Notes under the pieces: model-generated
What the model was told of the DNA's origin: nothing
The model's database searches: none
What the model saw: only the letters and a program-made list of their open reading frames with translations
Made by a program: the position numbers and the translations under genes
Assembly: GCA_002269645.1 (NCBI GenBank)
Contig: NIVC01001785.1
Coordinates: forward strand, 1-64,000
Direction: 5' to 3'
Origin: Macrostomum lignano
Taxonomy: Eukaryota
DNA length: 64,000 nucleotides
Shown here: piece after piece, positions 14,087-60,041 of the stretch
Numbering within the stretch: the first letter of the stretch is position 1
Layout of the letters: each line of letters opens with the position of its first letter

Positions 14087-14408
14087 ATTAGTGATCATTT
14101 TATTTTTAATTAGAAGTTTTTCCAATAATTGACTTGACCCAATCTTGTTCTATGAAAACTTGGGCTTTGGGTTATGTACCTTGAACACCCCTTAATATAT
14201 TTTATATACTTGACAAACAAGTTCCAGGTCAGGGTTCTGTGGAATAGACATTTTAGTTTGCCTTCTCATTGCCTATAAATTTGACTGATTACTATGAATT
14301 AAGCAAGTATTTAGTGTGGCCTAATATTTCCTTTTGCAACTCTCTGCTTCAGCTGATTGTGCTGCCAATCAATTTGCAGTTCTCCACAGGCCAAAAACAT
14401 CAATCCCA

Positions 14409-20400: not shown

Positions 20401-21544
20401 CATCATCAGAGGCCTTACAAATGCCGTCTCCCCTGCAAATCAGGTCAAAGACGAGCAGGGCGGCGTGCGCGCCAACGCCACCGTGTGCTTGGGCAAGCTG
20501 GCCGGCCACATGGCCCCGGCAACCAGACAGGGCCCCCTGCTGGCCCAGTTCCTCAAATGCCTGCGCGACCCGTTCCCGCCGGCGAGACAGGCCGCCCTGC
20601 TAGCCTGCGCGTCTACCCTGTCATTCTACACACTGCGGGACACCGCCTGCCGCCTGCTGCCGGCCCTCTGCCCGCTGACACTGGACCCGAGCAAAGAGGT
20701 TCGCGAGCACGCATTCCAAGCTATTAACGCCTGTCTGCAACGCCTGCGCAAAGCGTCGGACAGTCCAGAGGAGGCAGCGGATCTCGAGAGTCAAGTGGCC
20801 GCCACTAGAGGCGCGGATTCCACTAGCAAGTCTTGGGCCAACTGGGCCGTGTCCGCTCTGTCAGCCAAGTTCTACAAGACCGCCCCGTCTGCGTCTGCTG
20901 CCGCCCCCGCTGCCGCTGTACCATCCGCTTCGGCACCTACTCCGGCATCTGCTACTGCCGAGCCTACTAACAGCAGTAGTATCAGCAAGCCATTGCCGCC
21001 TGTCGCTAATACAGCTTCCGCTGCCGCTGCTGCCAATGCGTCGGCAGTTGCGCCAGCCACCACCGACTGGAACGACGCCTGGAGCGACGCTGACGATGAC
21101 GGTGATTGGGGCAGCATCGAGGAGGCTGGATCGTCGGCGATGGAGAAGCAATCGGCATCAGGGTTGGCTCCGAGCTCTTCCTCCTCCGCTGCTGCCAGCG
21201 CCTGGGACACCAACTGGGGCGACGAGGAGGACGACACCCAGAAGGAGCCGATCCAGTCGGCGGTGGAGCCGCCGCCAATTCGTGCGGCATTGTCGTCGGC
21301 TGCAAAATCCGGCGGCGGTGGACTCAAGCTTACTGGCGCTAAAAAGTTGGCGCCGAAATTGGCGCCTAGCGCCGGTAGCAATCTGGACGCCATCCTATCT
21401 GAAGAGATGGCCAGGCAACAGCTGGCACCGCAAAAGCAGCAGCAGCAGCAGCAACAGCCGATCCGAAATCCACAGAAGGAACAGAAGCACAGAAGGCAGC
21501 AGAAGAAACCAAGTGACGATGAGGATGATTGGGGAGCCTGGTAA
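14409..21544 (+). CDS. SCYL1: SCY1-like protein 1 (N-terminal pseudokinase, HEAT repeats, disordered tail), ~801 aa; join(14409..14780,15499..15765,16693..16950,17937..18344,20444..21544)
   Basis: All four introns are GT-AG, phase 0. Motifs MWSLFSKDP, KTLRHPCVLTY, LYVVTERVWPL, VFVNSAGEWKL, SWGLGCFVWEVFN, HKVLPQL, KDEQGGVRANATVCLGK, RDPFPPARQA and LTLDPSKEVREHAF match the SCYL1 family. Confidence 0.93.
15855..16362. repeat. Minisatellite, 35-37-bp unit GGATTCTTGTTATTGTG(TA)ATGGGTGAGATTTTGAAT, in SCYL1 intron 2
   Basis: About 14 tandem copies. Confidence 0.95.
16399..16645 (+). mobile_element. tRNA-derived SINE with CORE/V-like central motif, in SCYL1 intron 2
   Basis: A-box-like TAGCCTAGCGG, B-box GGTTCGATTCCC, then TTGTGTCCTTGAGCAAGACACTTAAC and a 3' (TTA)n tail. 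Boundaries approximate; no TSD found. Confidence 0.7.
17040..17905. repeat. C-rich minisatellite, 20-bp unit CCCCTACCATCCCAGATCCG, in SCYL1 intron 3
   Basis: About 43 copies. Confidence 0.95.
18445..20424. repeat. Minisatellite, 38-bp unit CCTTACAAATGCCTGTCTTCACCCTTCATCATCAGAGG, in SCYL1 intron 4
   Basis: About 52 copies; source of the spurious 400-716-aa ORFs. Confidence 0.97.
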
Positions 21545-23164: not shown

Positions 23165-25608
23165 GATTTGGGGGTATTTTAACGAGTTAGGGTATTTTTG
23201 AGGAGATAAGGTACTTGGAGAAAGCTGGGGTATTTTTGAGGAGATAAGGTACTTGGAGAAAGCTGGGGTATTTTTGAGGAGATAAGGTACTTGGAGAAAG
23301 CTGGGGTATTTTGAGGAGATAAGGTACTTGGAGAAAGCTGGGGTATTTTTGAGGAGATAAGGTACTTGGAGAAAGCTGGGGTATTTTGGGGAGATAAGTT
23401 ACTTGGAGAAAGCTGGGGTATTTTGAGGAGATAAGGTACTTGGAGAAAGCTGGGGTATTTTGAGGAGATAAGGTACTTGGAGAAAGCTGGGGTATTTTTG
23501 AGGAGATAAGGTACTTGGAGAAAGCTGGGGTATTTTTGAGGAGATAAGGTACTTGGAGAAAGCTGGGGTATTTTTGAGGAGATAAGGTACTTGGAGAAAG
23601 CTGGGGTATTTTTGAGGAGATAAGGTACTTGGAGAAAGCTGGGGTATTTTTGAGGAGATAAGGTACTTGGAGAAAGCTGGGGTATTTTTGAGAAGATAAG
23701 GTACTTGGAGAAAGCTGGGGTATTTTTGAGGAGATAAGGTACTTGGAGAAAGCTGGGGTATTTTTGAGGAGATAAGGTACTTGGAGAAAGCTGGGGTATT
23801 TTGAGGAGATAAGGTACTTGGAGAAAGCTGGGGTATTTTTGAGGAGATAAGGTACTTGGAGAAAGCTGGGGTATTTTGAGGAGATAAGGTACTTGGAGAA
23901 AGCTGGGGTATTTTTGAGGAGATAAGGTACTTGGAGAAAGCTGGGGTATTTTGAGGAGATAAGGTACTTGGAGAAAGCTGGGGTATTTTGAGGAGATAAG
24001 GTACTTGGAGAAAGCTGGGGTATTTTGAGGAGATAAGGTACTTGGAGAAAGCTGGGGTATTTTGAGGAGATAAGGTACTTGGAGAAAGCTGGGGTATTTT
24101 TGAGGAGATAAGGTACTTGGAGAAAGCTGGGGTATTTTGAGGAGATAAGGTACTTGGAGAAAGCTGGGGTATTTTTGAGGAGATAAGGTACTTGGAGAAA
24201 GCTGGGGTATTTTTGAGGAGATAAGGTACTTGGAGAAAGCTGGGGTATTTTTGAGGAGATAAGGTACTTGGAGAAAGCTGGGGTATTTTTGAGGAGATAA
24301 GGTACTTGGAGAAAGCTGGGGTATTTTTGAGGAGATAAGGTACTTGGAGAAAGCTGGGGTATTTTTGAGGAGATAAGGTACTTGGAGAAAGCTGGGGTAT
24401 TTTTGAGAAGATAAGGTACTTGGAGAAAGCTGGGGTATTTTTGAGGAGATAAGGTACTTGGAGAAAGCTGGGGTATTTTTGAGGAGATAAGGTACTTGGA
24501 GAAAGCTGGGGTATTTTTGAGGAGATAAGGTACTTGGAGAAAGCTGGGGTATTTTTGAGGAGATAAGGTACTTGGAGAAAGCTGGGGTATTTTGAGGAGA
24601 TAAGGTACTTGGAGAAAGCTGGGGTATTTTTGAGGAGATAAGGTACTTGGAGAAAGCTGGGGTATTTTTGAGGAGATAAGGTACTTGGAGAAAGCTGGGG
24701 TATTTTTGAGGAGATAAGGTACTTGGAGAAAGCTGGGGTATTTTTGAGGAGATAAGGTACTTGGAGAAAGCTGGGGTATTTTGAGGAGATAAGGTACTTG
24801 GAGAAAGCTGGGGTATTTTTGAGGAGATAAGGTACTTGGAGAAAGCTGGGGTATTTTGAGGAGATAAGGTACTTGGAGAAAGCTGGGGTATTTTTGAGGA
24901 GATAAGGTACTTGGAGAAAGCTGGGGTATTTTGAGGAGATAAGGTACTTGGAGAAAGCTGGGGTATTTTTGAGGAGATAAGGTACTTGGAGAAAGCTGGG
25001 GTATTTTGAGGAGATAAGGTACTTGGAGAAAGCTGGGGTATTTTTGAGGAGATAAGGTACTTGGAGAAAGCTGGGGTATTTTTGAGGAGATAAGGTACTT
25101 GGAGAAAGCTGGGGTATTTTTGAGAAGATAAGGTACTTGGAGAAAGCTGGGGTATTTTTGAGGAGATAAGGTACTTGGAGAAAGCTGGGGTATTTTTGAG
25201 GAGATAAGGTACTTGGAGAAAGCTGGGGTATTTTGAGGAGATAAGGTACTTGGAGAAAGCTGGGGTATTTTTGAGGAGATAAGGTACTTGGAGAAAGCTG
25301 GGGTATTTTGAGGAGATAAGGTACTTGGAGAAAGCTGGGGTATTTTTGAGGAGATAAGGTACTTGGAGAAAGCTGGGGTATTTTGAGGAGATAAGGTACT
25401 TGGAGAAAGCTGGGGTATTTTTGAGGAGATAAGGTACTTGGAGAAAGCTGGGGTATTTTTGAGGAAATAAGGTACTTGGAGAAAGCTGGGGTATTTTGAG
25501 GAGATAAGGTACTTGGAGAAAGCTGGGGTATTTTGAGGAGATAAGGTACTTGGAGAAAGCTGGGGTATTTTTGAGGAGATAAGGTACTTGGAGAAAGCTG
25601 GGGCATTT
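23165..25608. repeat. Minisatellite, 37/38-bp unit TTTT(T)GAGGAGATAAGGTACTTGGAGAAAGCTGGGGTA
   Basis: About 64 near-identical copies; source of the spurious ~800-aa minus-strand ORFs. Confidence 0.97.
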
Positions 25609-26861
25609 TGACGATCTGGTGTATATGGACGAGTTGCGGTATTTGGAGGGGTATTCTGGGGAGCTGGGCACAGCAATAATCAGAGCCAATAGACATGTAC
25701 GGTACACAGCAATCATCGGCTCCCGCCAGTCGCAGGGAAATGCAGAGGTGCTCAAACGCGCGCACAGCGCGCAAAGCAGACAAAATTAGTCCAAGGTTTG
25801 TAACTCTGGCTAGAAAAAGCAGTTGGATTGGTGGGTGATAGATAAATGTATGGGGATTGCTGCAGCTACAGGCAAAATGTTTACCACAGTCTAAAACGGC
25901 TACTGAAAATCTAAACCGAAATTCTAAACAAAACTTTAAAAGATAAATAATAGAACTACTTATACTGTAATTTTGCTTCTCAAATCAGTGGATCAATCAC
26001 AGAAAGTTATAAAAATAGTTGAAAAATCACCCATTGAGGAATAACGGAAAGCTCGTTGCAGATAATAGACTTTTAGAAATAGAAACCATCTTCAATTCTG
26101 TTACCTTCACTCTCTCCTGCTCAGGCTTCCGTTTGACAAATTTGACAATGAAGGCTGCGCATTTCATGTCCTTTTGAGACGAAAACTCTGAAAATCAGTC
26201 CAGAAATGTCCCAGAGTTTTCCATCATTCTCTCCTTGCGCTCTGATGTGCCAGCGGCCCAGGCTCGATTCCAAGTGCAGTCACATTAATCTGGGGCTAAA
26301 TTGGAATCTCGGCTTGGCTCTGCTAGTGCAATTAACGCCCTTAAGGGCCAACCCTCAAGACACAGTGAAGTGTACATGCCGAACGATAAATAAAGCTAGG
26401 ACCGCTGTACACTCCTGTGTGAGTGTGCCTGTGCGTATGACTGCGTACGTATCCGCGCGCTTGTGTGCCTGCTCAGGGGAGTCGGCGGAATGGGCAGCAA
26501 TGCCTCTCGCCGGTTGTGCGACAAAGTCGCTTGAAGTGCGCCAGAGTGCACACAGCCCCCTTGTATCCACGATCTAATATAAAAATCAGCTTAGGAGAGT
26601 TCGTCTACTGATAAAAGTAGAAAGTGTAGAATGTGGTGCTAAAAGTTTGCACGGCGAGCTGAGTTTTCGCCATGCTGGACAGTGCAAAGATTTAATAGAT
26701 TTCTGTTCTCTTTAAACCCTATAGCTGACTGAGAATGACTGACTGGGGCTGTAACAGAGACCTAAGCAAGCCGCCCCCCATGTACACACACGAGTAGGTC
26801 TCGTAAGTATAGGTTGAAGCGAGTAGGTTGAAGTCATTGAATTCTGAGTCATTAGGCCAGG

Positions 26862-29662
<2,801 letters not shown>

Positions 29663-32600: not shown

Positions 32601-34536
32601 GATCGCGTATTGGCTATAGAGTCATTTAACGCACGAGATATATATGTTGTGATTACAATGCTGGTTCTTCTTGCTATGTTATGGCCACATACGAGTATGG
32701 CCACATGTCTATGGCCACTCGTACGCTCTACCTGTTCGCCTTATCTATTTGATCCCAAGTGTTAAAACATGTGGAGATTATCAGTAGCTTATATTCCCCT
32801 ACCATAGACAGCGGAATTCTTCTTTTGGTATCGGTGCATTATAACATCTATATCCGTTGATCTCCGCTCCCTGTACAGATCCATCGCGGCTCACAGGCCG
32901 TGAATCCCATTAAAATATTGCACTTAAATTCAGAGATACTCTATGGCACAAACTCCAAAGAACTGAACCTCCTCGTTTCAGTGTATTATATATTTAAAAC
33001 CACTTCGCGCCCAAGCTTGGTTCTGTAAGATGGCTTAAAAGCCCAAAGGCCTGCAGAGCAGTCCATAGACAAATTTGTCTTTTTTGCTGAATCGAGTGCA
33101 CACCCTAGAAGCCCAGAAGTAAAGTATATTGTAGTGTTACTCCTTCTCGGGTTCTTTAAGATGTTCCTAGCAAATAGAACCCGCTGCTCCTGAAGAAGCT
33201 AGATAGCACCGCAGTACTACCTATCGATTTGCCTGAAAATGAACCTAAAACGTTAGCCGTGACTTGGTAGGGTTGCTGCCACCTTGGTGTGCGGACTCGA
33301 CGCGTCGGCAGAGTTGTCTATCCGTCACCTGAAAGAAAAATAACAAAGTCGCTCGGAGCAAAGGCAAATCTGAAAAATGTCTCGACAGTCGATCGTCTTA
33401 GTAGAATGCTGCTCGAACCTGAAAACCTGAAAACCTGAAATGAGAGAGAAGAGCTCGGAGGCAGAGGCAGCTCCAATCGAGGAAGCTCCCGAACGCGGCT
33501 CACGATCTGGAGAAAATGGCTCGCAGATGCTCCGTATTTATAGCCGAGCGGACCCCCAAAAGTCACGTGAGTTTCATGCGGTGAGCGCGTGAAACTTCCT
33601 TATTTGGTTACTAAAATCATGCGAGCGACGCGTGATTCAAGGCCAACTTCCAAATAAGGCAACCCTGCACGCAGCAGTGGCGTGACTCAAGGTCAGTGGC
33701 CACGCTCCAGCTAAGAAGACAGTATTTTGCTGCAGCCAATGTCCCGGAAATCCTGGTCTCTGTCCAGATCCATGCTAATTCATCCACGCTTTAATTCCCC
33801 TTTAACATTTCCCATTTGAGTGAAAACACAATGGAAATGCATAATGGACGTCTTTAAATCAGTCATGGCCTGCACAGCAGGCCATACTGGGCACTTGCTT
33901 TAGTGATTGGGATATGGTTTTTGATGCCATAGACATTTTTCAATCTCTGGGTTTCTGGGCCGTTTCGGTATGGCCTGCAGTGCAGGCCTTTGGCTTCCAA
34001 ATGGTTAAGCACTCAAAACCACAGATTTATACCTAAGGTATATTAATACCCATGCTGCAAGAATGAAAACGAGAAGTTGGGGTGTGAGGGGCGAGCCCCC
34101 ACATTCCAACCATAGACATTTCCACTTCAATGTAGGCTTAAATGTACGGTATTAAAGGGATGAATTAAGTCGCAGGCAAAAAGGTCATATAGAATCTGTG
34201 CTCAAAACCGACTATTCAACTCCTCAGTTGAGCACGCTTTTGACGTTTAATGCACGCTTTTTCATATTTGAATTGTGTTACAATGGACGTTTCGGGCACG
34301 CTTTTCCCCGCCAATGCGTTGTCTAATTATATTTGATGGTTGGACTGCGTCAACAAACGCTCGAATGGCGCTATTTGATCAATCTGTCATCAAGCAAGCA
34401 AATGCAAATGCATGCATTATATTTTCATGGCTAGTCAGGCTGCTTCAATTCAGTCTAGTCAGCCTTGTTTTTGTAAGGGACTTTAACTCAAACAACTTCG
34501 CTACTCGGACCGGAAAAACGAGACAACTTATTGCCC

Positions 34537-34543
34537 TATAAAT
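34537..34543 (+). promoter_or_regulatory. TATA box of the secreted E/K/H-rich gene
   Basis: TATAAAT 84 nt upstream of the ATG at 34621. Confidence 0.5.
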
Positions 34544-34620
34544 TTGCAGACCTCGTCTCCGACTCTGGTGACTTTCGCCGACGACGATTCACATACTCGA
34601 CGACTCGCTCAATAGCAACC

Positions 34621-35718
34621 ATGAAGTGGCAGCTCGCTCTCGGATTTTTGCTGTGCGCAGCCCTGGCTGCCCAGGCCGCAAACTCCGGCAATCGTGAACA
34701 AGCTCAGGAGCACGAAAAGGAGCACGAGGAGAAGAGGGAGCTCGAGAAGGAGCGCGAAAAGGCGCACGAGGAGAAGAGGGAGCTCGAGAAGGAGCACGAA
34801 AAGGAGCGCGAGGAGCGCGAGGAACTCGAGAAGGAGCGCGAAAAGCAAGACGACGAGCACGAGGAGGTCGACCAGGAGCGCGAAGAGCTCGAAAAGGAGC
34901 GCGAAAAGGCGCACGAGGAGAAGAGGGAGCTCGAGAAGGAGCGTGAAAAGGAGCACGAGGAGCGCGAGGAGCTCGACAAGGAGCGCGAAAAGCAAGACGA
35001 GGAGCGTGAGGAGCTCGACAAGGAGCGCGAAAAGCAGGACGAGGAGCGCGAAGAACTCGACAAGGAGCGCGAAAAGGAGCACAAGGAGCGCGAAGAGGAG
35101 GACGAAGAAGAGCACAAGGACCACAAAGAAAAGCACAAGGTGAAGAAGGAGCTCGAGAAGGCTGAGGAGGAGCACGAGAAGCACAAGGTGAAGAAGGAGC
35201 TCGAGAAGGCTGAGAAGGAGCACGAGAAGCACAAGTTGAAGAAGGTGCTCGAGAAGGCTGAGGAGGAGCACGAGAAGCACAAGGTGAAGAAGGAGCTCGA
35301 GAAGGCTGAGAAGGAGCACGAGAAGCACAAGTTGAAGAAGGTGCTCGAGAAGGCTGAGGAGGAGCACAAGGAGCGCAAGGAGCAGAGGGAGCTCGAGAAG
35401 GCCGAGAAGGCCGAGAAGGCCGAGAAGGAGCACAAGGAGCGCAAGGAGCAGAGGGAGCTCGAGAAGGCCGAGAAGGCCGAGAAGGCCGAGAAGGAGCACA
35501 AGGAGCGCAAGGAGCAGAGGGAGCTCGAGAAGGCCGAGAAGGCCGAGAAGGCCGAGAAGGAGCACAAGGAGCGCAAGGAGCAGAGGGAGCTCGAGAAGGC
35601 CGAGAAGGAGCACGAGGAGCACAAGGAGGAGGTAGAAAAGCGCGATGCTATGCTGGAGGCTCTGGCCAACCTGGACAGTTTCAACATGCTGGAGGAGAGG
35701 GCCGAGAACCTCAACTAG
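34621..35718 (+). CDS. Uncharacterised secreted Glu/Lys/His-rich repetitive protein, 365 aa, single coding exon
   Basis: ATG at 34621. Signal peptide-like MKWQLALGFLLCAALAAQA, then nested 14-22-aa charged repeats and a unique tail KR-DAMLEALANLDSFNMLEERAENLN*. TATAAAT at 34537 and AATAAA at 35933 bracket the ORF; synonymous variation between repeats is consistent with coding. Confidence 0.82.
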   Translation: MKWQLALGFLLCAALAAQAANSGNREQAQEHEKEHEEKRELEKEREKAHEEKRELEKEHEKEREEREELEKEREKQDDEHEEVDQEREELEKEREKAHEEKRELEKEREKEHEEREELDKEREKQDEEREELDKEREKQDEEREELDKEREKEHKEREEEDEEEHKDHKEKHKVKKELEKAEEEHEKHKVKKELEKAEKEHEKHKLKKVLEKAEEEHEKHKVKKELEKAEKEHEKHKLKKVLEKAEEEHKERKEQRELEKAEKAEKAEKEHKERKEQRELEKAEKAEKAEKEHKERKEQRELEKAEKAEKAEKEHKERKEQRELEKAEKEHEEHKEEVEKRDAMLEALANLDSFNMLEERAENLN

Positions 35719-39234: not shown

Positions 39235-41115
39235 CAAGTGTCTAATGAACATTCACCCATTCTTGCAATGGTGTCTGTGGCATTCACCCATTCTTACAAT
39301 GGTGTCTGTGGCATTCACCCATTCTTGCAATGGTGTCTGTGGCATTCACCCATTCTTGCAACTGTGGCATTCACCCATTCTTGCAATGGTGTCTGTGGCA
39401 TTCATTCACCCATTCTTGCAATGGTGTCTGTGGCATTCACCCACTCTTAAAATGGTGTCTGTAGCATTTACCCACTCTTAAAATGGTGTCTGTGGCATTC
39501 ACCCATTCTTACAATGGTGTCTGTGGCATTCACCCATTCTTGAAATGGTGTCTGTGGCATTCACCCATTCTTGCAATGGTGTCTGTGGCATTCACCCATT
39601 CTTACAATGGTGTCTAATGAACATTCACCCATTCTTGCAATGGTGTCTGTGGCATTCACCCATTCTTGCAATGGTGTCTGTGGCATTCACCCATTCTTGC
39701 AATGGTGTCTGTGGCATTCACCCATTCTTGCAATGGTGTCTGTGGCATTCACCCATTCTTGCAATGGTGTCTGTGGCATTCACCCATTCTTGCAATGCTG
39801 TCTAATGAACATTCACCCATTCTTGCAATGGTGTCTGTGGCATTCACCCATTCTTGCAATGGTGTCTGTGGCATTCATTCACCCATTCTTGCAATGGTGT
39901 CTGTGGCATTCACCCATTCTTGCAATGGTGTCTGTGGCATTCACCCACTCTTAAAATGGTGTCTGTGGCATTCACCCACTCTTAAAATGGTGTCTGTAGC
40001 ATTTACCCACTCTTAAAATGGTGTCTGTGGCATTCACCCATTCTTGCAATGGTGTCTGTGGCATTCATTCACCCATTCTTGCAATGGTGTCTGTGGCATT
40101 CACCCACTCTTAAAATGGTGTCTGTAGCATTTACCCACTCTTAAAATGGTGTCTGTGGCATTCACTCATTCTTACAATGGTGTCTGTGGCATTCTCCATT
40201 CTTACAATGGTGTCTGTAGCATTTACCCACTCTTAAAATGGTGTCTGTGGCATTCACCCATTCTTGAAATGGTGTCTGTGGCATTCACCCATTCTTGCAA
40301 TGGTGTCTGTGGCATTTACCCACTCTTAAAATGGTGTCTGTGGCATTCACCCATTCTTGCAATGGTGTCTGTGGCATTCACCCATTCTTACAATGGTGTC
40401 TGTGGCATTCTCCATTCTTACAATGGTGTCTGTGGCATTCACCCACTCTTAAAATGGTGTCTGTGGCATTCACCCATTCTTGCAATGGTGTCTGTGGCAT
40501 TTACCCACTCTTAAAATGGTGTCTGTGGCATTCACCCATTCTTGCAATGGTGTCTGTGGCATTCTCCATTCTTGCAATGGTGTCTGTGGCATTCACCCAT
40601 TCTTACAATGGTGTCTAATGAACATTCACCCATTCTTGCAATGGTGTCTGTGGCATTCACCCATTCTTGCAATGGTGTCTGTGGCATTCACCCATTCTTG
40701 CAATGCTGTCTAATGAACATTCACCCATTCTTGCAATGGTGTCTGTGGCATTCACCCATTCTTGCAATGGTGTCTGTGGCATTTACCCACTCTTAAAATG
40801 GTGTCTGTGGCATTCACCCATTCTTGAAATGGTGTCTGTGGCATTCACCCATTCTTGCAATGGTGTCTGTGGCATTCACCCATTCTTACAATGGTGTCTA
40901 ATGAACATTCACCCATTCTTGCAATGGTGTCTGTGGCATTCACCCATTCTTGCAATGGTGTCTGTGGCATTCACCCATTCTTGCAATGCTGTCTAATGAA
41001 CATTCACCCATTCTTGCAATGGTGTCTGTGGCATTCACCCATTCTTGTAATGGTGTCTGTGGCATTCACCCATTCTTGCAATGGTGTCCGTGGCATTCAC
41101 CCATTCTTGCAATGG
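39235..41115. repeat. Minisatellite, 31-bp unit CAATGGTGTCTGTGGCATTCACCCATTCTTG, with higher-order variant blocks
   Basis: About 60 copies. Confidence 0.96.
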
Positions 41116-41119
41116 TTAT

Positions 41120-41355: not shown

Positions 41356-42920
41356 ACTGCTCTTCTGCTGAGTGTACATACCATTTCAATCTGAACTTTG
41401 GCAAAAGTGACTTCAATTTTGGCCAGCCCATCGACAAAACGTTAATTTACCTTTCGGCAATGTCTATGGTACCAGGTAACTGTGGCAGAATCAGATAAAA
41501 GCCTAAAACAGTCACTGTTACTGATTCAATGATCTAAATTTCATTGATGAAGTCACTGAAAAAAAACATTTTCTTTTGTCCTCACGTTGCTTCAAAGCAA
41601 CGCTAGCTTCAGTGACAAATCTGTGAATGATCGCCTCGGCCTTGGTTCTCTTCATGTCAGTCGTCTCCAGTCTCTTCCTTCTTGGATGCTGCGCATCAAG
41701 CCGTTCTCCATCCTTCAGACCGCCACTCTAGGCCTCTGGTCCTGGGCCTCCTTGGACAAGCGCAGGTTGGTTTGAATTTTTAATTAGCCGAGCGGCTCGG
41801 TGTGAGATGGCAAACGAATTCTGTCACGAGAGAATTTCAAAAAACAGAAATCTAGTTCAAAATCTTTTTGCTTCATTGAATTGTCTTGAAATGACGGAAT
41901 TTGCTTCCAAGAGTTGGAAACTGACCGGATTAAAGGGGTGATTGTTATTTTGATCTGAGTCGGGATGCAGTAAGAGTGGGGATCTATAGAGATTAATGAT
42001 TCCGGGATCCACTAGGATTTAGCATCAGTAATCAAATAGAAATAGAGTCTATATCAATTAGGATCCGATAGGATTAGAGTGGTTAGGCATTAAGATTGGA
42101 GTTGGGACTCATTAAGAGTATAATACTGGTTTCAACTTTTATTGCGAACTATTGTATCAATAACTTCTATTGTATCCAGTAAGTTCCTATTTTTAGCTTT
42201 TACGAGCAGACTATATTCAGATGATAATTGTTCATTGCGAGGTACTATAAATATGAATTCACACTCTTAATTGTTTTATAGTGACAAGAGTACCTGACTT
42301 CGACAGTAACGGTGTCACAGTGTATTACATCACGCTTGTAACAATTCAATACGTAGACGGCAGCGCCAAATTAAATTGCCTTCTTTGAGGAAAGAGATGA
42401 TGATTTTTTGGACAGCTACAAGTTGAATTTGTGCCGGTTAAACGTTTCAAACATCTCTGTCTTCTAAGCTGTTTCGTTCGACATTTCTAATATATAAACA
42501 AAGTAATAATGTACCTACAAGCAATGCATTGCTACGCAGGATACCAGAAATGAAAGCGAAAATGCAGTTAAATGATTATATTCTAACACTTCATACCATC
42601 TTGAAAGTACGGGTACAATGTAAAACCACATTTGCAAGCCATAGGGTTTAAAAACATAGCTTACTTGCTGCGACAATTTCTTAATCTAGCGTAGGTTCTT
42701 TTACCCCTTTTAGTCCAATCAGGAGCTTTGGAAGCGATATTTGCGATTGGTTCGACTACTACCTGAGCAGCGAGTTGAAGTTCGCTGACAGACTCACCTA
42801 AGTTGAGAAGCAGTTTACTAACTGTTAACTCCTGGCACATTGTGGCAGCGCTTAAACGGCGAGCATCTCGAAATTCGTCTGGAACCGCTTGGAGCTCGCG
42901 AATTTTAGCAGCTGCCCATC

Positions 42921-43499
42921 ATGCGCCCGCTAATCTCTTGCTGGCTCTTTGTAGCCGCTCTTTGTCTGACCGCCGTTGCCGTCAGCAACGCGAACTCCAA
43001 CCTGGATGAAGACGATGACTACATTGGAGTAGCTCCTGAGCATGAGCAGCTCCGATACAACTCAAAAGGCCTCCGTAGAGATCTTCGTAAGTGGCAGTAC
43101 AACGGCGGCATGTTCGGAAAACGGCAGTACAACGGCGGCATGTTCGGAAAGCGGCAGTACAACGGCGGCATGTTCGGAAAGCGGCAGTACAACGGCGGCA
43201 TGTTCGGAAAACGGCAGTACAACGGCGGCATGTTCGGAAAACGGCAGTACAACAGCGGCATGTTCGGAAAACGGCAGTACAACGGCGGCATGTTCGGAAA
43301 ACGGCAGTACAACGGCGGCATGTTCGGAAAACGGCAGTACAACGGCGGCATGTTCGGAAAACGGCAGTACAACGGCGGCATGTTCGGAAAACGGCAGTAC
43401 AACGGCGGCATGTTCGGAAAACGGCAGTATAACGGCGGCATGTTCGGAAAACGGCAGTACAACGGCGGCATGTTCGGAAAACGGCAGTACGAAGAGTAA
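42921..43499 (+). CDS. Neuropeptide precursor, 192 aa, 13 copies of QYN(G/S)GMF-G-KR (predicted pQYNGGMFamide)
   Basis: Signal peptide MRPLISCWLFVAALCLTAVAVSNA, acidic spacer (LDEDDDY), RK site, then 13 x 10-aa units each ending Gly-Lys-Arg (amidation + convertase site), ending QYEE*. AG acceptor just upstream of the ATG; AATAAA at 43724. Confidence 0.93.
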   Translation: MRPLISCWLFVAALCLTAVAVSNANSNLDEDDDYIGVAPEHEQLRYNSKGLRRDLRKWQYNGGMFGKRQYNGGMFGKRQYNGGMFGKRQYNGGMFGKRQYNGGMFGKRQYNSGMFGKRQYNGGMFGKRQYNGGMFGKRQYNGGMFGKRQYNGGMFGKRQYNGGMFGKRQYNGGMFGKRQYNGGMFGKRQYEE

Positions 43500-43723: not shown

Positions 43724-43729
43724 AATAAA
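43724..43729 (+). terminator. Polyadenylation signal of the neuropeptide gene
   Basis: AATAAA ~225 nt after the stop codon. Confidence 0.45.
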
Positions 43730-49344: not shown

Positions 49345-52300
49345 TTATTCCTTTTTCAGCCGCAGCCGCTCGTTGATAATCTTGCACCGCTGGGCGCACT
49401 CGTCCGCGCTGCGGGAGCCCACGGCCGCAGCCACCTGATCCCAGCGCTCCTTCGTACCTTTGGGAAATTGTCTGAGCGCCGCCTCCAGCTTAGACTGCTC
49501 AGCCTGACTCCAGGCCCGAGTCCGCTGCTGAGCTTCATCTATATCGTCTTCTTCTGCTTTAACGGTTACGCCTCTCTGCTGCTGCTGCTGCTTCTGGCGC
49601 TTATTTCGACGCCTTCGCTGCGCCCTGCCGGCGCCGCCATCCGAATCGGCGTCGCTGTCCGTGTCCGATTCGCCGCACACCGCCGCCCCATCGGTGTTGA
49701 CTTCGAAAGCGGCGTTGAGGCTGGCGGCAGCCTGGCGCCGCATCTGCTGCTCGGCCTCGCGAGCCCGGGCGGCCACGTCCGGCACGGCGCGATGCAGCAG
49801 GGCGGCGATTTTCTCCCAGCGGCCGGGCGTGCCGCTTGGGAATCTGGCAACTGCCTTGACCAGAAGCTGCTGCTCCGCCTCGCTCCAGGGACCCTCGACT
49901 AGAGCCGGCGGAGTCGTTGATTCCGCCTGGTCGCCGTTGCTGATGGCGGCTTTGACTGGCGGAGTCGGCAACGGCTGCTGCTGTTCAGCCAGCAATTGCT
50001 GCTGCACCTGGGCCAGTTGCTGCTCCCGGCGCTCGCGTTTCTGCTGCTTTCTCTGCTCCCGCCTGCGGGCCTCCTCGGCTGCGGCTTCCGCTTCCGCTTT
50101 GGCCGCCCGCTTCCGTTGCAGTTCGGCGTCGCGCCAATCGGCCAGGCTGTCCAGCGCCCAGCGGCAGGCGCCTGGCGCGCCAACAGCGCAGGCGTAGAGG
50201 CCGCGACCGATGGCCAACGGCAGGAGGTCCCGCCAGCCTGGGCCCACTAGCGGCTCCTGTTCCAGCTCTTCTTCCAGTTGTTTCTGCTTTTTCTTGCTCT
50301 TCCGCCGGAATAGATCGTCGAATGCTAGTTTCCTTTCAATGTAGACACCCCACAGGACTAAATAGTGGCCGACTGTGAACGCCAAGCAGAACACCAGCAT
50401 CACTTCCGCTAAGCTCATCTTTCGCCACTTCCGGTAATAAAACATCGGGGTGCGCCAGTCGGGCAGCCCATTGTCAAGGATCTCGTCGTACCTGGCCAGG
50501 GTAGAGGGCAGATGGAGAGGTTCAGACTCGATTCTCGGTTCTCGTGATTGAAAAAAAACTTTGAATCAGGCCTAGGAGTGATTCTTGGTTCCCGGGCGGT
50601 TCTTGATTTTGGTTACCAGCCTTTCTTGAAAATTGGCCAACCCCACAACAGAGTGTACATGCCTGACGATGTACACCCTGTGTGAGCGTGTGCATGAGTG
50701 CGTGCACCGTTTGCAGGATGGTGTTGCCGAAGGCACTGCGCCAGGCTGCCCACAACCCAATTGCAAGTATTATTAGTAGGAGTTATTCTGAGAATATCTT
50801 ATGAAAATTCATTTTCGGAATTGACACCGCCGAGATACTTGCGAGCTGGGCGGATCCCACCTGAGCGCTCGCAATAAGGTATCATTACTTTAGGCATGAG
50901 AAATTTCCTAACGCGTCACAAAATGGGGAATTGAAGTATTCGATAAAAAAAGTACTTTTTCACCCGCTGGGATCAAAGCATAAAATTTGATGGACTATTA
51001 ACTTGATTAAAAGCTATTAACCGATCAAAAGGCATGTCATGTGTGTTACAAATCAGTATAATCACATAAAAGTTTTTAGCTTGTCTAGACACTTATATAG
51101 GACAATCGATAAATAAAAAATGGGGAAACACAAATGCTTGAAAGTAGACGATTATAATTGTATGCGTAGCTAATAACTAGATATTAGGAATGGGCTATTG
51201 CGAGCGTAAACAATCCAATTAGAATCGCCGAGGACACCCATTAAGAATCGCCCATGACACCATGAGGTATCGCCCATGACACCCATGAGGAATCGCCCAT
51301 GACACCATGAGGTATCGCCCATGACACCCATTAGGAATCGCCCATGACACCATTAGGAATCGCCCATGACACCATGAGGAATCGCCCATGACACCCATGA
51401 GGAATCGCCCATGACACCATGACGTATCGCCCATGACACCCATGAGGAATCGCCCATGACACCATGAGGTATCGCCCATGACACCATGAGGTATCGCCCA
51501 TGACACCATGAGGAATCGTCCATGACACCATGAGGTATCGCCCATGACACCCATTAGGAATCGCCCATGACACCCATGAGGAATCGCCCATGACACCATG
51601 AGGAATCGCCCATGACACCATGAGGAATCGCCCATGACACCATGACGTATCGCCCATGACACCCATGAGGAATCGCCCATGACACCATGACGTATCGCCC
51701 ATGACACCCATAAGGAATCGCCCATGACACCATGAGTAATCGCCCATGACACCATGAGGTATCGCCCATGACACCATGAGGAATCGCCCATGACACCCAT
51801 TAGGAATCGCCCATGACACCATTAGGAATCGCCCATGACACCCATTAGGAATCGCCCATGACACCATGAGGAATCGCCCATGACACCATGACGTATCGCC
51901 CATGACACCCATGAGGAATCGCCCATGACACCATGACGTATCGCCCATGACACCCATGAGGAATCGCCCATGACACCATGAGTAATCGCCCATGACACCA
52001 TGAGTAATCGCCCATGACACCATGAGGTATCGCCCATGACACCATGAGGAATCGCCCATGACACCATGAGGAATCGCCCATGACACCATGACGTATCGCC
52101 CATGACATCATGAGGAATCGCCCATGACACCATGACGTATCGCCCATGACACCATGAGGAATCGCCCATGACACCATGAGGAATCGCCCATGACACCATG
52201 AGGTATCGCCCATGACACCATGAGGAATCGCCCATGACACCATGACGTATCGCCCATGACACCATGAGGAATCGCCCATGACACCATGACGTATCGCCCA

Positions 52301-58125: not shown

Positions 58126-59297
58126 TCACGATTTCGGCGGTTTATAATCTTCGCCATTGAGTCGCATCTGGCCGGTGAACCGGTGCACCTTGATATTAAC
58201 CGGCCGTTTGATCATCCGATCGGCGTGCGACCGGCTAGCCAGATGCTGCCGCCAGGCCGCCTCCGACACGGTGGCAAAGGCGCAGCGGAGGCAATCGTAG
58301 CGGCGCTGCCGCTTGGTGCAGGCGGCCTCGTGCGAGGCCAGAGTCTCCCGCTTAGCTGAGCGATGGCCGCAGAAGTAGCGGCAGGAGTACAGCGGCTGGA
58401 TGTTGGCGTGGGCCTGCCGGCGATGGCTAACAATCTCATGGTAGGTGCGGCACACGAACGAGCAGAATGAGCACTGGAAGCAGAGCTCTTTATGGGTGGA
58501 ACAGTGCGCAAAATAGCGGCGCTGACTGTCGCAGGTGAAGCTGCACTTCTCGCAGGCGAATCTAGGCGCAAGCGGTTTCTCTTCGTTGACTATTTCAATG
58601 TCACTGTCGGCGCCGGTGTCTGTTGCGACGGCAGCCGACGAATTCGTGGCAGCAGCAGCAGCAGCAGTGGAAGCAGGAGCAGACGAAACCAGAGACTGAT
58701 CAACAAGGCCAGCTAAACTAGCCGAGTGCTTGAGCTCGCAGTGAGCCACGGCAGCATCAGCCGTGTTGAACAGCATCGAAGCAGCGCAGGCTGTGCAAAC
58801 CATCCGGCTGTTGAGATGAAAAGCCAGCAGGTGTTCGGCCAGCACCCGGTCGCTGGGGAATCGACCGCCAGCAGATTTACAAGCAGCTATGGGACAGCGG
58901 ATTAACGACCGGGTGGCAGAAGCCGCACCTGTGACAGTTGGAGCGGCTGGAGAGACAAGAACCGTGGGAGGCACCACCGGGCGAGATGGTGCGTCAACAA
59001 TCTGTACATCGTCATCGTCGCCATTGTACACCGTCGAATTCCAACTGACGACATTTCGACTCTGCCTGCTGTTGATCCCATTGCTATTGCTACTCTGCTG
59101 TCTAGCCACATTAGCAACGTTGGGGCTATTCCTAACTCCAATAGTCCATCTGCCATTGCCAACCCCGTGGCCATTGTTGCGGATGGCGCTGCCGTTGCCA
59201 CGGCTGCTGTTATGGTTGTGATCATCAGTGTCTTCCTCATCGTCAATTATGACAACAATGGGCAGGCCGCCATTGGGCCGACCACTGCTTGGTGGAA
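58126..59297 (-). CDS. C2H2 zinc-finger protein (about 6 fingers) with SIM-like motifs; terminal exon only, 5' exon(s) not located
   Basis: Open frame with CxxC...HxxxH fingers (e.g. CEKCSFTCDSQRRYFAHCSTH, CSFCSFVCRTYHEIVSHRRQAH), one C2HC finger and a final HLASRSH matrin-like finger. No in-frame ATG near the start; a pyrimidine tract plus CAG acceptor at 59298-59300 indicates a phase-1 exon start. Confidence 0.8.
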
Positions 59298-60041
59298 CTG
59301 TTGTATGTGGCAAAGACAAAAATAATGCAACAGAATTATTTAATTAATCAATTTTTTAATTAGTATTTATTCATATTGATTATATAAGCAGACTTAGGCC
59401 TATCTTAGATACTTAACTATTTTTTATATTCAGATAGAATTAGTAAATATTATATAATGACCAGTACATTTTAATAGTATACTATTCCTACAATTGTATA
59501 TAGTTAATATCATTCTTAGCTTTTTAACTTTGAATCTATTGATAAAAATAAATTTAGGCCAGCCAAAATAGTCAAGCCAATAGCCAATGCAATAAGCCCC
59601 CTAATATTTACAGAAATAAGCCTTACAGCTTAGGCCTAAAGTATATAGAGGACTACAAAATAATATTTTGCTTCTTGCTATAGCCAGTGTCTTTAATTTA
59701 TTTTTCTTTTTGTAATAGCTATAGGTCTAATTTAGCAAATTAAGAGATATTTTATAATTAAAGCAACAAAACTAGGGCTAAAAGACCTTTTGCTAACCTG
59801 TTGAAAAAGTAGACAATGAGAATTTTATTAGAATTTCATATTTATTGCATGCAAAAACTAAGTGTTGGTTAGGAATTAAAAAAGTATATTATTGGCCTTA
59901 TATTTAAACTTTTTATGCTAGAACTAATCATTTAGTAGGCCTAAAGCAAAGTATATTTAATTTTCAAAATACAAAAGCTCTAGATTTTTGCTATATTATA
60001 TTTTTTAACTATAACTCTAGACTATAGCCTCTTTATAAAAA

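What the first reader, a model, noticed from the sequence alone, without database searches (positions are those of the whole stretch)
42921..43499. Multi-copy amidated neuropeptide precursor of an unfamiliar family: pQYNGGMFamide x12 plus variants
Seen: signal peptide, acidic spacer and 13 tandem units flanked by KR and ending in Gly (one WQYNGGMF, eleven QYNGGMF, one QYNSGMF). Established: G-KR gives C-terminal amidation (PAM) after prohormone-convertase cleavage, and N-terminal Gln cyclises to pyroglutamate. Inference: the mature ligand is pGlu-YNGGMF-NH2, blocked at both ends. I cannot assign -GGMFamide to any neuropeptide family I know (not RFamide, Wamide, allatostatin-A/buccalin or FFamide), so it may be a lineage-specific signalling system with an unknown receptor. 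The 13 units differ at only 4 of 390 nt, implying very recent expansion or homogenisation, like the neighbouring non-coding arrays.
Basis: partly seen in the sequence, partly recalled or inferred. Interest (0 to 1): 0.82.

Follow-up and report, generated by a model that had tools for sequence, protein, structure and literature searches.

The report
Flatworm multi-copy amidated neuropeptide precursor gene
This is a real-looking single-exon gene in the flatworm Macrostomum lignano that encodes 13 tandem copies of a short signalling peptide (pGlu-YNGGMF-amide), an ordinary kind of gene whose peptide closely resembles the nematode NLP-10 / arthropod SIFamide family rather than being unplaceable.

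Summary
ORF 42921-43499 (+) encodes 192 aa: a hydrophobic signal peptide, an acidic spacer, 13 tandem 30-nt units (one WQYNGGMF, eleven QYNGGMF, one QYNSGMF, each followed by G-K-R) and a QYEE tail. Five of 390 nt differ from the unit consensus, not four. The window is the start of contig NIVC01001785.1 of assembly GCA_002269645.1 (Macrostomum lignano). A second contig carries an identical copy.

Chance is an unlikely explanation. A stop-free G-[KR]-[KR] frame arises in 3-7% of random 30-mers, but an in-frame leader this hydrophobic arose in 0 of 20,000 shuffles. No other of about 27 tandem arrays in the window has these features.

The best explanation is a canonical multi-copy neuropeptide or peptide-hormone precursor. 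It would be cleaved at dibasic sites, trimmed, amidated and cyclised to pGlu-YNGGMF-NH2.

The "unfamiliar family" reading is only partly supported. The C-terminal hexapeptide lies inside the observed variation of nematode NLP-10, P-[FY]-[SN]-G-G-[MILVF]-Y-NH2, the ligand of the NPFF/SIFamide-type receptor NPR-35. It resembles arthropod SIFamide (PFNGSIF-NH2). The multi-copy, cysteine-free architecture matches NLP-10 but not arthropod or spiralian SIFamide precursors. Orthology is unproven, because receptor, expression and peptidomics data are missing. No homologue and no mention were found in the databases or papers searched.

The parts
42921..43499 (+). Complete single-exon CDS, 192 codons plus stop, of the peptide precursor
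   Evidence: Called as a 192-aa gene on two contigs of GCA_002269645.1.
42906..42908 (+). In-frame TAG 15 nt upstream of the ATG. It lies within 'ttttag' (42903-42908), a possible (trans-)splice acceptor; that reading is inference only.
   Evidence: and the sequence.
42921..42992 (+). Predicted signal peptide MRPLISCWLFVAALCLTAVAVSNA, with Ser at -3 and Ala at -1
   Evidence: mean hydropathy 2.49 over 15 aa; 0 of 20,000 shuffled leaders match it. The cleavage site follows the -3/-1 rule (established knowledge); SignalP was not run.
42993..43091 (+). Acidic spacer or pro-region NSNLDEDDDYIGVAPEHEQLRYNSKGLRRDLRK, with RR and RK sites
43092..43481 (+). 13 tandem 30-nt units, each encoding (W/R)QYN(G/S)GMF-G-K. 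They yield 11 x QYNGGMF, 1 x QYNSGMF and 1 x WQYNGGMF, each followed by Gly-Lys-Arg.
   Evidence: TRF, period 30, 13.3 copies, 98%; 5 of 390 nt differ.
43482..43499 (+). Truncated last unit and tail, R-QYEE-stop. The first 9 nt match the repeat unit.
43724..43729 (+). Candidate polyadenylation signal AATAAA, 225 nt after the stop. It is the only + strand copy between 43499 and 47703.
   Evidence: Its function is inferred.

Best explanation
This is a protein-coding gene of Macrostomum lignano for a classical multi-copy, amidated neuropeptide or peptide-hormone precursor. The sequence shows a 24-residue signal peptide, an acidic spacer and 13 nearly identical units in which a heptapeptide is followed by Gly-Lys-Arg. 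The following steps are inferred from the established secretory-peptide pathway. The signal peptide is removed in the ER. A prohormone convertase (PC2-type) cuts after each KR, and also after RR and RK. A carboxypeptidase E-type enzyme removes the basic residues. Peptidylglycine alpha-amidating monooxygenase converts the exposed Gly into a C-terminal amide. The N-terminal Gln cyclises to pyroglutamate. One translation product would therefore yield eleven pGlu-YNGGMF-NH2 ([M+H]+ 798.324), one pGlu-YNSGMF-NH2 (828.335) and one WQYNGGMF-NH2 (1001.430). The peptides would be released from dense-core vesicles and act on a G-protein-coupled receptor. The most likely family affinity, held tentatively at about 0.4, is the SIFamide/NPFF-type system in its nematode NLP-10-like form: multi-copy, no cysteine domain, core [FY]-[NS]-G-G-hydrophobic-[YF]-amide. 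If that is right, the receptor would be an NPFF/SIFamide-type rhodopsin GPCR.
For: Anatomy. Against chance: leader 0 of 20,000 shuffles; G-[KR]-[KR] frame in 2.8-7.4% of random units; no other ORF in the window has more than three G-[KR]-[KR] sites. No Pfam domain reaches threshold. The only hit is a sub-threshold match to the TRH precursor family, another KR-Q...G-KR multi-copy precursor. Species and duplicate locus. The CDS is 100% identical at nucleotide level on the second contig, so it has not decayed. A PC2 homologue is expressed in the M. lignano nervous system and is essential (PMC4490696). pGlu and C-terminal amidation were observed by mass spectrometry on a spiralian SIFamide/FF precursor (PMC8557429 supplement). 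M. lignano has at least one other precursor of the same design with homogenised repeats (PAA49395.1, AMYSGLL-GKR). Family affinity: the NLP-10 family was retrieved and named (C. elegans P0300 AIPFNGGMYGKR; CBR-NLP-10 P0324). Every residue of Y-N-G-G-M-F occurs at the matching position in that family. Matrix score is 10.9 bits, above all 202 background peptides and above arthropod FNGSIF, with random expectation 1.3e-4. NLP-10 is the ligand of NPR-35, an NPFF/SIFamide receptor orthologue (PMC11004728, PMC7615250, bioRxiv 10.1101/2023.11.23.568473). SIFamide paralogues ending in -IMFamide and -SMYamide exist in insects (bioRxiv 10.1101/2020.09.17.302331).
Against: No expression, peptidomic or receptor evidence could be obtained. 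No homologue was found in other flatworms or any other non-nematode taxon (none; only repeat-driven hits plus an NLP-10 homologue at E = 2.2e-6, ranked 147th). The exact protein is absent from the 15-billion-protein collection that does hold other M. lignano GenBank proteins. The identity of the two genomic copies is not specific evidence of selection. The whole tract from about 42.5 to 47.5 kb is near-identical, including two non-coding arrays. For the family assignment: the score of 10.9 bits is below the 10th percentile of true NLP-10 peptides (16.5). The near-invariant Pro at -7 and Tyr at -1 are not shared. The canonical arthropod and spiralian SIFamide architecture (one or two peptides next to the signal peptide plus a two-Cys tail) is not met. 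Short multi-copy peptides are known to converge (PMC6188537).
Confidence: 0.8

Rival explanations
1. It is a genuine precursor, but of a lineage-specific (macrostomid or flatworm-only) peptide family. The resemblance to NLP-10/SIFamide is convergent, and the receptor is an unrelated, possibly flatworm-specific, rhodopsin GPCR.
For: No homologue was found outside this genome. None of 47 Schistosoma mansoni npp peptides resembles it. No similar peptide occurs in the planarian prohormone paper or its held supplements. All named NLP-10 hits are nematodes. Spiralian SIFamide peptides are strongly conserved as NMNSLFF/NMNNLLF with two Cys, unlike this gene. Convergence of short multi-copy peptides is considered likely by specialists (PMC6188537). 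Flatworms have many orphan flatworm-specific rhodopsins (PMC6114109).
Against: A six-position fit to the NLP-10 envelope is expected in about 1.3e-4 of random amidated hexapeptides. It exceeds the fit of the accepted orthologue, arthropod SIFamide. The precursor architecture also matches NLP-10.
Confidence: 0.45
2. It is the macrostomid orthologue of a flatworm family that is already named, so it is not new. Candidates are an Ml-npp gene from the 2009 EST survey of flatworm neuropeptides, or 'Attachin', the cestode SIFamide homologue.
For: A cestode SIFamide homologue, Attachin, is cited (Preza et al. 2022, reference lists in PMC11196405 and PMC10614006). McVeigh et al. 2009 surveyed M. lignano ESTs (cited in PMC4490696; the content is recalled from memory). 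SIFamide is listed among the peptide abbreviations in the legend of a Fasciola GPCR phylogeny whose outer labels mark families previously reported in flatworms (PMC6114109).
Against: Neither paper is held, so this could not be tested. No full text among 8.3 million papers contains QYNGGMF, NGGMF in a peptide sense, GGMFamide or Ml-npp. The S. mansoni npp list has nothing similar.
Confidence: 0.25
3. It is a non-coding satellite whose 30-nt period happens to give an open reading frame. It would be one more of the many arrays in this satellite-rich region, with no peptide product.
For: About 32% of the window is tandem arrays. All frames through this array are open. Unit homogeneity of 98% is similar to some neighbouring arrays. 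Identity between the two contigs extends to neighbouring non-coding arrays.
Against: The array is preceded, in frame and without stops, by an ATG and a leader as hydrophobic as a signal peptide (0 of 20,000 shuffles). It starts and ends in register with dibasic sites. Each unit has Gly-Lys-Arg and begins with Gln. No other array in the window has these properties. Three of five unit variants are silent or lie outside the peptide.
Confidence: 0.03
4. It is a secreted multi-copy peptide precursor that is not neuronal, for example an exocrine gland product such as a pheromone, an antimicrobial peptide or an adhesive or secretory-granule peptide.
For: The sequence alone cannot give the cell type. 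M. lignano has abundant gland secretions. A neighbouring gene (34621-35718) also encodes a secreted repetitive protein.
Against: A 7-residue peptide blocked at both ends, produced through G-KR sites in many copies, is the hallmark of neuropeptides. It resembles a known neuronal peptide family.
Confidence: 0.08

Closest known systems
Nematode NLP-10 (SIFP-1) precursors, e.g. C. elegans P0300, C. briggsae CBR-NLP-10 (P0324) and Ancylostoma ceylanicum EYC05570.1 (P0147)
   Same: Signal peptide followed by an acidic spacer. Several copies (2-7) of a short peptide, each followed by G-K-R. No cysteine-containing tail. Core motif [FY]-[SN]-G-G-[MILVF]-[YF]-amide. Every residue of YNGGMF is seen at the matching position in the family.
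   Different: NLP-10 peptides are 9-11 residues long with a near-invariant Pro at -7 and Tyr at -1 (F in 3 of 197), and have no N-terminal Gln/pGlu. Copies within one precursor differ from each other and are separated by spacers. Here there are 13 contiguous, almost identical heptapeptides ending in Phe. The taxa are a nematode and a flatworm.
Arthropod SIFamide (e.g. Tribolium ...TYRKPPFNGSIF-GKR) and its paralogues SMYamide and IMFamide
   Same: The C-terminal hexapeptide class is aromatic-N-G-small-[IM]-F-amide. N, G and F are identical, and Y/F, G/S and M/I are conservative changes. Paralogues ending in -MFamide and -MYamide exist.
   Different: SIFamide precursors carry a single 12-residue peptide directly after the signal peptide, and a C-terminal peptide with two conserved Cys. 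Here there are 13 copies, a spacer before the first copy, and no Cys after the signal peptide.
Spiralian SIFamide/FFamide precursors (Platynereis SIFamide-1 and -2, Lineus, mollusc FFamide)
   Same: Amidated peptides ending in hydrophobic-Phe with Asn at -5. pGlu and amide modifications were confirmed by mass spectrometry in Lineus.
   Different: The motifs are strongly conserved as ...PLLF/GLFF-amide plus NMN[SN]L[FL]F-amide: two peptides per precursor and a two-Cys tail. They score -5.6 to -9.0 on the NLP-10 matrix. No flatworm-named member was among the best 120 hits.
TRH-type multi-copy precursors (Pfam PF05438)
   Same: Repeated KR-Gln-...-Gly-KR units that give peptides blocked at both ends by pGlu and an amide. 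This is the only Pfam hit (E = 0.015, 15.5 bits).
   Different: The score is below the curated cut-off of 27.8 bits. The TRH peptide is the tripeptide QHP. The resemblance is architectural only.
Macrostomum lignano PAA49395.1 (P0036), an xMYSGLL-amide multi-copy precursor
   Same: Same genome and same design: signal peptide, spacer and a run of nearly identical decapeptide units ending in G-K-[KR].
   Different: The peptide is different (buccalin or npp-24-like, -SGLLamide), so it is presumably a different receptor system. It is annotated in GenBank, whereas the present protein was not found in that collection.
Cnidarian pGlu-...GGRFamide peptides (Hydra-RFamide I, pQWLGGRF-NH2; recalled from memory) and echinoderm SALMFamides
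   Same: Heptapeptide length, pGlu, aromatic at position 2, Gly-Gly and a C-terminal Phe-amide (RFamides). SALMFamides end in -L-x-F-amide or -MFamide.
   Different: Arg at -2 defines RFamides, and here that position is Met. WLGGRF scores -2.1 on the NLP-10 matrix, and the SALMFamide ends score -4.6 and -6.1. These are leads from memory, not tested for homology.

Membership tests
Multi-copy amidated neuropeptide/peptide-hormone precursor (generic kind) | N-terminal signal peptide | tested here: met
   MRPLISCWLFVAALCLTAVAVSNA has a hydrophobic core with mean hydropathy 2.49, matched by 0 of 20,000 shuffles. The -3/-1 residues are Ser and Ala. SignalP was not available.
Multi-copy amidated neuropeptide/peptide-hormone precursor (generic kind) | Repeated short peptides flanked by dibasic cleavage sites, with Gly before the site as amide donor | tested here: met
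   13 units of x7-G-K-R.
Multi-copy amidated neuropeptide/peptide-hormone precursor (generic kind) | Small protein with no other domains | tested here: met
   192 aa, with no Pfam family above threshold.
Multi-copy amidated neuropeptide/peptide-hormone precursor (generic kind) | Expressed in neurons or endocrine cells, with the mature peptide detectable | not testable with these tools
   No transcriptome or peptidome of M. lignano is reachable. The exact protein is absent from the protein collection.
Nematode NLP-10 / SIFP-1 | Peptide core [FY]-[SN]-G-G-hydrophobic-aromatic-amide | tested here: met
   YNGGMF lies within the observed residue set at all six positions. It scores 10.9 bits, above all 202 background peptides, with random expectation 1.3e-4.
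Nematode NLP-10 / SIFP-1 | Pro at -7 and Tyr-amide C-terminus (near-invariant: P in 182 of 197, Y in 185 of 197) | tested here: not met
   Here the residues are Gln at -7 and Phe at -1. The score is below the family's 10th percentile.
Nematode NLP-10 / SIFP-1 | Multi-copy precursor without a cysteine-containing C-terminal domain | tested here: met
   There are 13 copies and no Cys after residue 16. NLP-10 precursors have 2-7 copies, and most have 0 Cys after residue 25.
Nematode NLP-10 / SIFP-1 | Detectable whole-precursor homology | tested here: inconclusive
   phmmer hit to A. ceylanicum NLP-10 at E = 2.2e-6, but it is ranked 147th among repeat-driven hits, so the E-value is not trustworthy.
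SIFamide/NPFF-type signalling system | Ligand activates an NPFF/SIFamide-type rhodopsin GPCR (this defines the family across phyla) | not testable with these tools
   The M. lignano genome outside two 20-64 kb loci could not be searched, and no pharmacology is possible. The NLP-10/NPR-35 pairing comes from the literature.
Arthropod/spiralian SIFamide (FFamide) precursor | One or two peptides immediately after the signal peptide | tested here: not met
   A 33-residue spacer precedes the first of 13 copies. Compare.
Arthropod/spiralian SIFamide (FFamide) precursor | C-terminal associated peptide with two conserved Cys | tested here: not met
   The tail is QYEE and contains no Cys. Most family members have 2 Cys.
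Arthropod/spiralian SIFamide (FFamide) precursor | Peptide end PFNGSIF-amide (arthropods) or NMN[SN]L[FL]F-amide (spiralians) | tested here: inconclusive
   Compared with FNGSIF there are 3 identities and 3 conservative changes out of 6. There is little similarity to the spiralian form.
Buccalin / allatostatin-A type | C-terminal Y/F-x-F-G-L-amide or -x-G-G-L-amide | tested here: not met
   The peptide ends in -G-M-F-amide, which is one residue longer. AFSGGL scores -11.8 on the NLP-10 matrix. M. lignano has a separate -YSGLLamide precursor.
RFamide (FMRFamide-like, NPFF sensu stricto) | C-terminal Arg-Phe-amide | tested here: not met
   The peptide ends in Met-Phe-amide.

The most novel reading that the evidence does not exclude
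pGlu-YNGGMF-amide is the ligand of a signalling system not yet described in any flatworm. One possibility is a Macrostomum-lineage invention with an orphan, possibly flatworm-specific, receptor. The more informative possibility is a spiralian representative of the NLP-10-like, multi-copy form of SIFamide/NPFF signalling. That would mean the '[FY]-N-G-G-hydrophobic-aromatic-amide' ligand form predates the ecdysozoan-spiralian split, and that the trochozoan FFamide form is derived.
Probability: 0.35. Interest if true: 0.6.

Novelty: new member of a known kind. Interest (0 to 1): 0.4.

Why it matters
If the gene is expressed, it supplies a concrete, easily synthesised ligand for GPCR deorphanisation in a genetically tractable flatworm: seven residues, blocked at both ends, [M+H]+ 798.32. 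Its close fit to nematode NLP-10 and arthropod SIFamide gives a specific, testable hypothesis about the receptor (NPFF/SIFamide type). It also bears on how that ancient system evolved in Spiralia, where the known ligands look different (FFamide with a two-Cys tail). Finally, it illustrates how coding tandem arrays behave in a genome that is very rich in satellites. If it proves to be an already listed Ml-npp gene or an Attachin orthologue, it is an ordinary annotation item.

Tried and rejected
1. The word-indexed homologue search with the full precursor gave 7 candidates and none significant. Even the protein itself is not in that collection.
2. A full HMMER scan of 1.84 billion representatives gave 364 hits, of which 150 are listed. 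Nearly all are period-10 repeat artefacts, such as G/S/T-rich proteins and nucleoporin-like FG repeats, or unrelated multi-copy precursors: QYAPRFLa from Elysia, ELPGMMFa from Plectus, GLWa, PMNMLRLa and EYPTEGILLa. Only P0147 (NLP-10 type) shares the core.
3. Literature searches for QYNGGMF, NGGMF, GGMFamide, MFamide with flatworm, Ml-npp and Macrostomum neuropeptide precursors found nothing relevant. A 'GGMFG' hit in crinoids is the internal sequence of a calcitonin-type peptide.
4. McVeigh 2009 and Preza 2022 (Attachin) are not held. The cap on papers was then reached.
5. A profile of spiralian and arthropod SIFamide precursors was used to look for a canonical flatworm SIFamide.
6. I compared the two genomic copies as a test of purifying selection. 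I rejected this as evidence, because the near-identity covers a tract of about 5 kb that includes non-coding arrays.
7. Pfam gave only a sub-threshold TRH-precursor match.
8. Rfam and tRNA scans of the window found nothing.
9. A self-BLAST for dispersed repeats found none of 300 bp or more.
10. Relations to SALMFamide, Hydra-RFamide and buccalin were considered from memory. They were set aside because the key positions differ and the scores are low.
Full report
**What is there**

It starts at the first ATG after an in-frame TAG that lies 15 nt upstream. It encodes 192 residues in four parts:
- a 24-residue hydrophobic leader, MRPLISCWLFVAALCLTAVAVSNA;
- a 33-residue acidic spacer containing RR and RK sites;
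- thirteen contiguous 30-nt units at 43092-43481;
- a truncated fourteenth unit that gives R-QYEE-stop.

The units encode one WQYNGGMF, eleven QYNGGMF and one QYNSGMF. Each is followed by Gly-Lys-Arg. Two differences are silent Lys changes and one is a silent Tyr change. One gives Gly>Ser inside the peptide. One is a CGG>TGG change that turns the Arg before the first copy into Trp. Tandem Repeats Finder reports the array as period 30, 13.3 copies and 98% matches.

**Where it comes from**

The exact protein is encoded on two contigs of assembly GCA_002269645.1. One is NIVC01001785.1, of which this window is the first 64 kb. The other is NIVC01003283.1. I recognise that assembly as Macrostomum lignano from memory. 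This agrees with a hit from the same project, PAA49395.1, which its source names as Macrostomum lignano.

**Is it more than chance?**

The question is a fair one. About 32% of the window consists of tandem arrays. All other frames through this array are also open, giving ORFs of 150, 154 and 113 aa.

A stop-free frame with G-[KR]-[KR] in every unit is not rare. It arises in 2.8% of random 30-mers of window composition and in 7.4% of shuffles of this unit. The leader is different. An in-frame, stop-free leader with a hydrophobic core as strong as the observed one (mean hydropathy 2.49 over 15 residues) arose in none of 20,000 shuffles of the leader. No other stop-free stretch in the six frames of the window has more than three G-[KR]-[KR] sites. 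The array also begins and ends in register with cleavage sites, and each peptide starts with Gln. I put the "accidental ORF in a satellite" reading at about 3%.

**The duplicate locus**

The second contig is collinear and has the same neighbours: a secreted Glu/Lys-rich repeat protein upstream and a DnaJ/Myb-domain (DNAJC2-like) gene downstream.

The 579-nt CDS is identical on the two contigs. There is no difference at all between window positions 42521 and 43967. I considered using this as evidence of purifying selection and rejected it. The whole tract from about 42.5 to 47.5 kb is almost identical, and that tract includes the non-coding 45-bp and 34-bp arrays, which have the same copy numbers and TRF scores on both contigs. 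Elsewhere the loci differ more:
- the last exon of the DnaJ gene is 98.8% identical;
- the upstream 31-bp array has 59.7 versus 20.7 copies;
- the 15-bp array has 65 versus 26 copies.

The comparison shows that the gene is intact in both copies. It shows nothing more.

**How it most likely works**

The anatomy is that of a classical multi-copy amidated neuropeptide precursor. The sequence shows the signal peptide, the spacer and the repeated x7-G-K-R units.

The rest is inferred from the established secretory pathway. A prohormone convertase cleaves after KR, RR and RK. Carboxypeptidase trims the basic residues. Peptidylglycine alpha-amidating monooxygenase amidates the C-terminus. The N-terminal Gln cyclises. 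The products would be eleven pGlu-YNGGMF-NH2 ([M+H]+ 798.324), one pGlu-YNSGMF-NH2 (828.335) and one WQYNGGMF-NH2 (1001.430).

Three findings from other work support this inference:
- a PC2 homologue is expressed in the M. lignano nervous system, and its knock-down is lethal (PMC4490696);
- both pGlu formation and amidation were seen by mass spectrometry on a nemertean precursor (supplement of PMC8557429);
- M. lignano has at least one other precursor of the same build, PAA49395.1, with runs of AMYSGLL-GKR.

Pfam gives no family above threshold. The only hit is a sub-threshold match to the TRH precursor, another KR-Gln...Gly-KR multi-copy design.

**Comparison with known families**

I could not find this peptide either. 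The word-indexed search of 5.8 billion proteins returned nothing. The exact sequence is not in the 15-billion-protein collection. Full-text searches of about 8.3 million papers for QYNGGMF, NGGMF, GGMFamide, MFamide with flatworm, and Ml-npp found nothing relevant. The 47 cloned Schistosoma mansoni npp peptides include nothing similar. The planarian prohormone paper and its held supplements also contain nothing similar.

The exhaustive HMMER scan of 1.84 billion representatives returned mostly repeat artefacts. One hit did share the peptide core: an Ancylostoma ceylanicum protein with PFSGGMY/PFSGGVY/PFSGGLY-GKR units. Searching with that protein retrieved 53 proteins. Every named one is from a nematode. 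They include "CBR-NLP-10" and the C. elegans protein with AIPFNGGMYGKR, STMPFSGGMYGKR, AAIPFSGGMYGKR and GAMPFSGGMYGR.

Across 197 peptides the family motif is P-[FY]-[SN]-G-G-[MILVF]-Y-amide. Occasional members end in Phe, for example PLNGGFF and YYSGGFF. Every residue of Y-N-G-G-M-F occurs at the corresponding position within this family.

On a position matrix built from the family:

| Peptide | Score (bits) |
|---|---|
| YNGGMF (this gene) | 10.9 |
| YNSGMF (variant unit) | 4.7 |
| FNGSIF (arthropod SIFamide) | 4.9 |
| Best of the 202 background amidation-type hexapeptides | 9.5 |
| True NLP-10 peptides, 10th percentile | 16.5 |

Only 1.3e-4 of random hexamers with amidated-peptide composition reach its score.

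NLP-10 is the ligand of NPR-35, an orthologue of NPFF/SIFamide receptors, and has been renamed SIFP-1 (PMC11004728, PMC7615250, bioRxiv 10.1101/2023.11.23.568473). Insect paralogues of SIFamide end in -IMFamide and -SMYamide (bioRxiv 10.1101/2020.09.17.302331). A -GMFamide end therefore lies within the range of this family.

**Membership is not established**

Several points count against filing it as a member:
- the score is below the 10th percentile of true NLP-10 peptides (16.5 bits);
- the near-invariant Pro at -7 and Tyr at -1 are replaced by Gln and Phe;
- the canonical SIFamide precursor architecture is not met. In 120 arthropod, mollusc and annelid sequences it is strongly conserved: PFNGSIF-amide in arthropods, or xPLLF/GLFF-amide plus NMN[SN]L[FL]F-amide in spiralians, placed next to the signal peptide and followed by a tail that usually has two Cys.

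In architecture the Macrostomum gene is like NLP-10: multi-copy and without a cysteine tail. It is odd for a spiralian peptide to resemble the ecdysozoan forms more than the spiralian one. Specialists also warn that short multi-copy peptides converge readily (PMC6188537).

A cestode SIFamide homologue, "Attachin", has been published (Preza et al. 2022, cited in PMC11196405 and PMC10614006). I could not read that paper. I also could not read the 2009 EST survey that included M. lignano. So I cannot say whether this gene is an orthologue of something already named there.

The defining test is activation of an NPFF/SIFamide-type receptor, and that cannot be done with these tools. My estimates overlap, because an already-named family could itself be SIFamide-type:
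- about 0.4 for a true SIFamide/NLP-10-type relationship;
- about 0.45 for a lineage-specific family with a convergent motif;
- about 0.25 that it is already listed under another name.

**Verdict**

The interpretation as a multi-copy amidated precursor is well supported by sequence (confidence about 0.8 that it is a genuine secretory peptide gene). It remains untested for expression.

The claim of an unplaceable family is only partly supported, because a specific and testable affinity to NLP-10/SIFamide exists. This is a new member of a well-known kind of gene, of moderate interest. The mechanism is entirely conventional. The peptide offers a good handle for receptor deorphanisation in a model flatworm, and for the question of how SIFamide/NPFF-type ligands evolved in Spiralia.

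Noticed in passing
window 1-64000: About 32% of the window (some 20.5 kb) consists of roughly 27 separate tandem arrays with periods of 4 to 147 bp. Several are kilobase-sized: 18451-20429 (38 bp x 52), 23190-25609 (38 bp x 64), 39250-41116 (31 bp x 60) and a (CTGT)152 microsatellite at 28831-29440. There are no dispersed repeats of 300 bp or more, no tRNA genes and no Rfam matches.
   Followed up: partly
window 34531-35718 (+); called gene L001:1701-2798: The upstream neighbour encodes a protein with a signal-peptide-like start (MKWQLALGFLLCAALAAQA) followed by long Glu/Lys/His-rich repeats (EKEREKEHEE..., KVKKELEKAEKEHEKH...). It has no Pfam family. Repeat number differs between the two contigs (products of 305 and 380 aa).
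   Followed up: partly
L001 vs L002 (window 32921-53499 vs NIVC01003283.1:81017-101595): The two collinear copies of the locus show patchy divergence. A tract from about 42.5 to 47.5 kb is almost identical, including two satellite arrays. Flanks are 92-97% identical, and array copy numbers differ up to three-fold (31-bp array 59.7 vs 20.7; 15-bp array 65 vs 26, with a different unit). This suggests either haplotypes or homeologues with a recent gene-conversion or recombination tract.
   Followed up: partly
P0036 = PAA49395.1 (Macrostomum lignano), not in the window: This is another M. lignano multi-copy amidated precursor with homogenised units (AMYSGLL-GKR in 6 or more copies, plus SIFSGVL-GKR). 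It is reminiscent of buccalin and of schistosome npp-24 (GGMYGGLL-G), and is annotated only as a hypothetical protein.
   Followed up: no
window 14334-14801 and 20117-21544 (+): Two ORFs look like exons of one gene. The second has HEAT repeats (Pfam), and from memory the pair resembles an SCY1-like N-terminal-kinase-like protein. They are separated by 20-bp and 38-bp satellite arrays (17041-17906 and 18451-20429). The 38-bp array runs in frame into the downstream exon ORF, so mechanical ORF lists fuse satellite and exon.
   Followed up: no
window 49345-50445 (-), 4907-5443 (-), 58126-59319 (-): Other probable genes are a DnaJ/Myb-SANT (DNAJC2-like) gene whose 366-aa last exon is 98.8% identical on the second contig, a fragment with a weak ubiquitin-conjugating-enzyme match, and a 397-aa Cys/His-rich ORF (possibly a zinc-finger protein) with no Pfam hit.
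   Followed up: partly
P0031 (Plectus sambesii, UniRef A0A914W1R3), not in the window: This nematode multi-copy precursor has ELPGMMF-GKR and xMGMMF-GKR units, so it is another -MMFamide family with no name given by the source. It does not fit the NLP-10 matrix (-3.8 bits).
   Followed up: no
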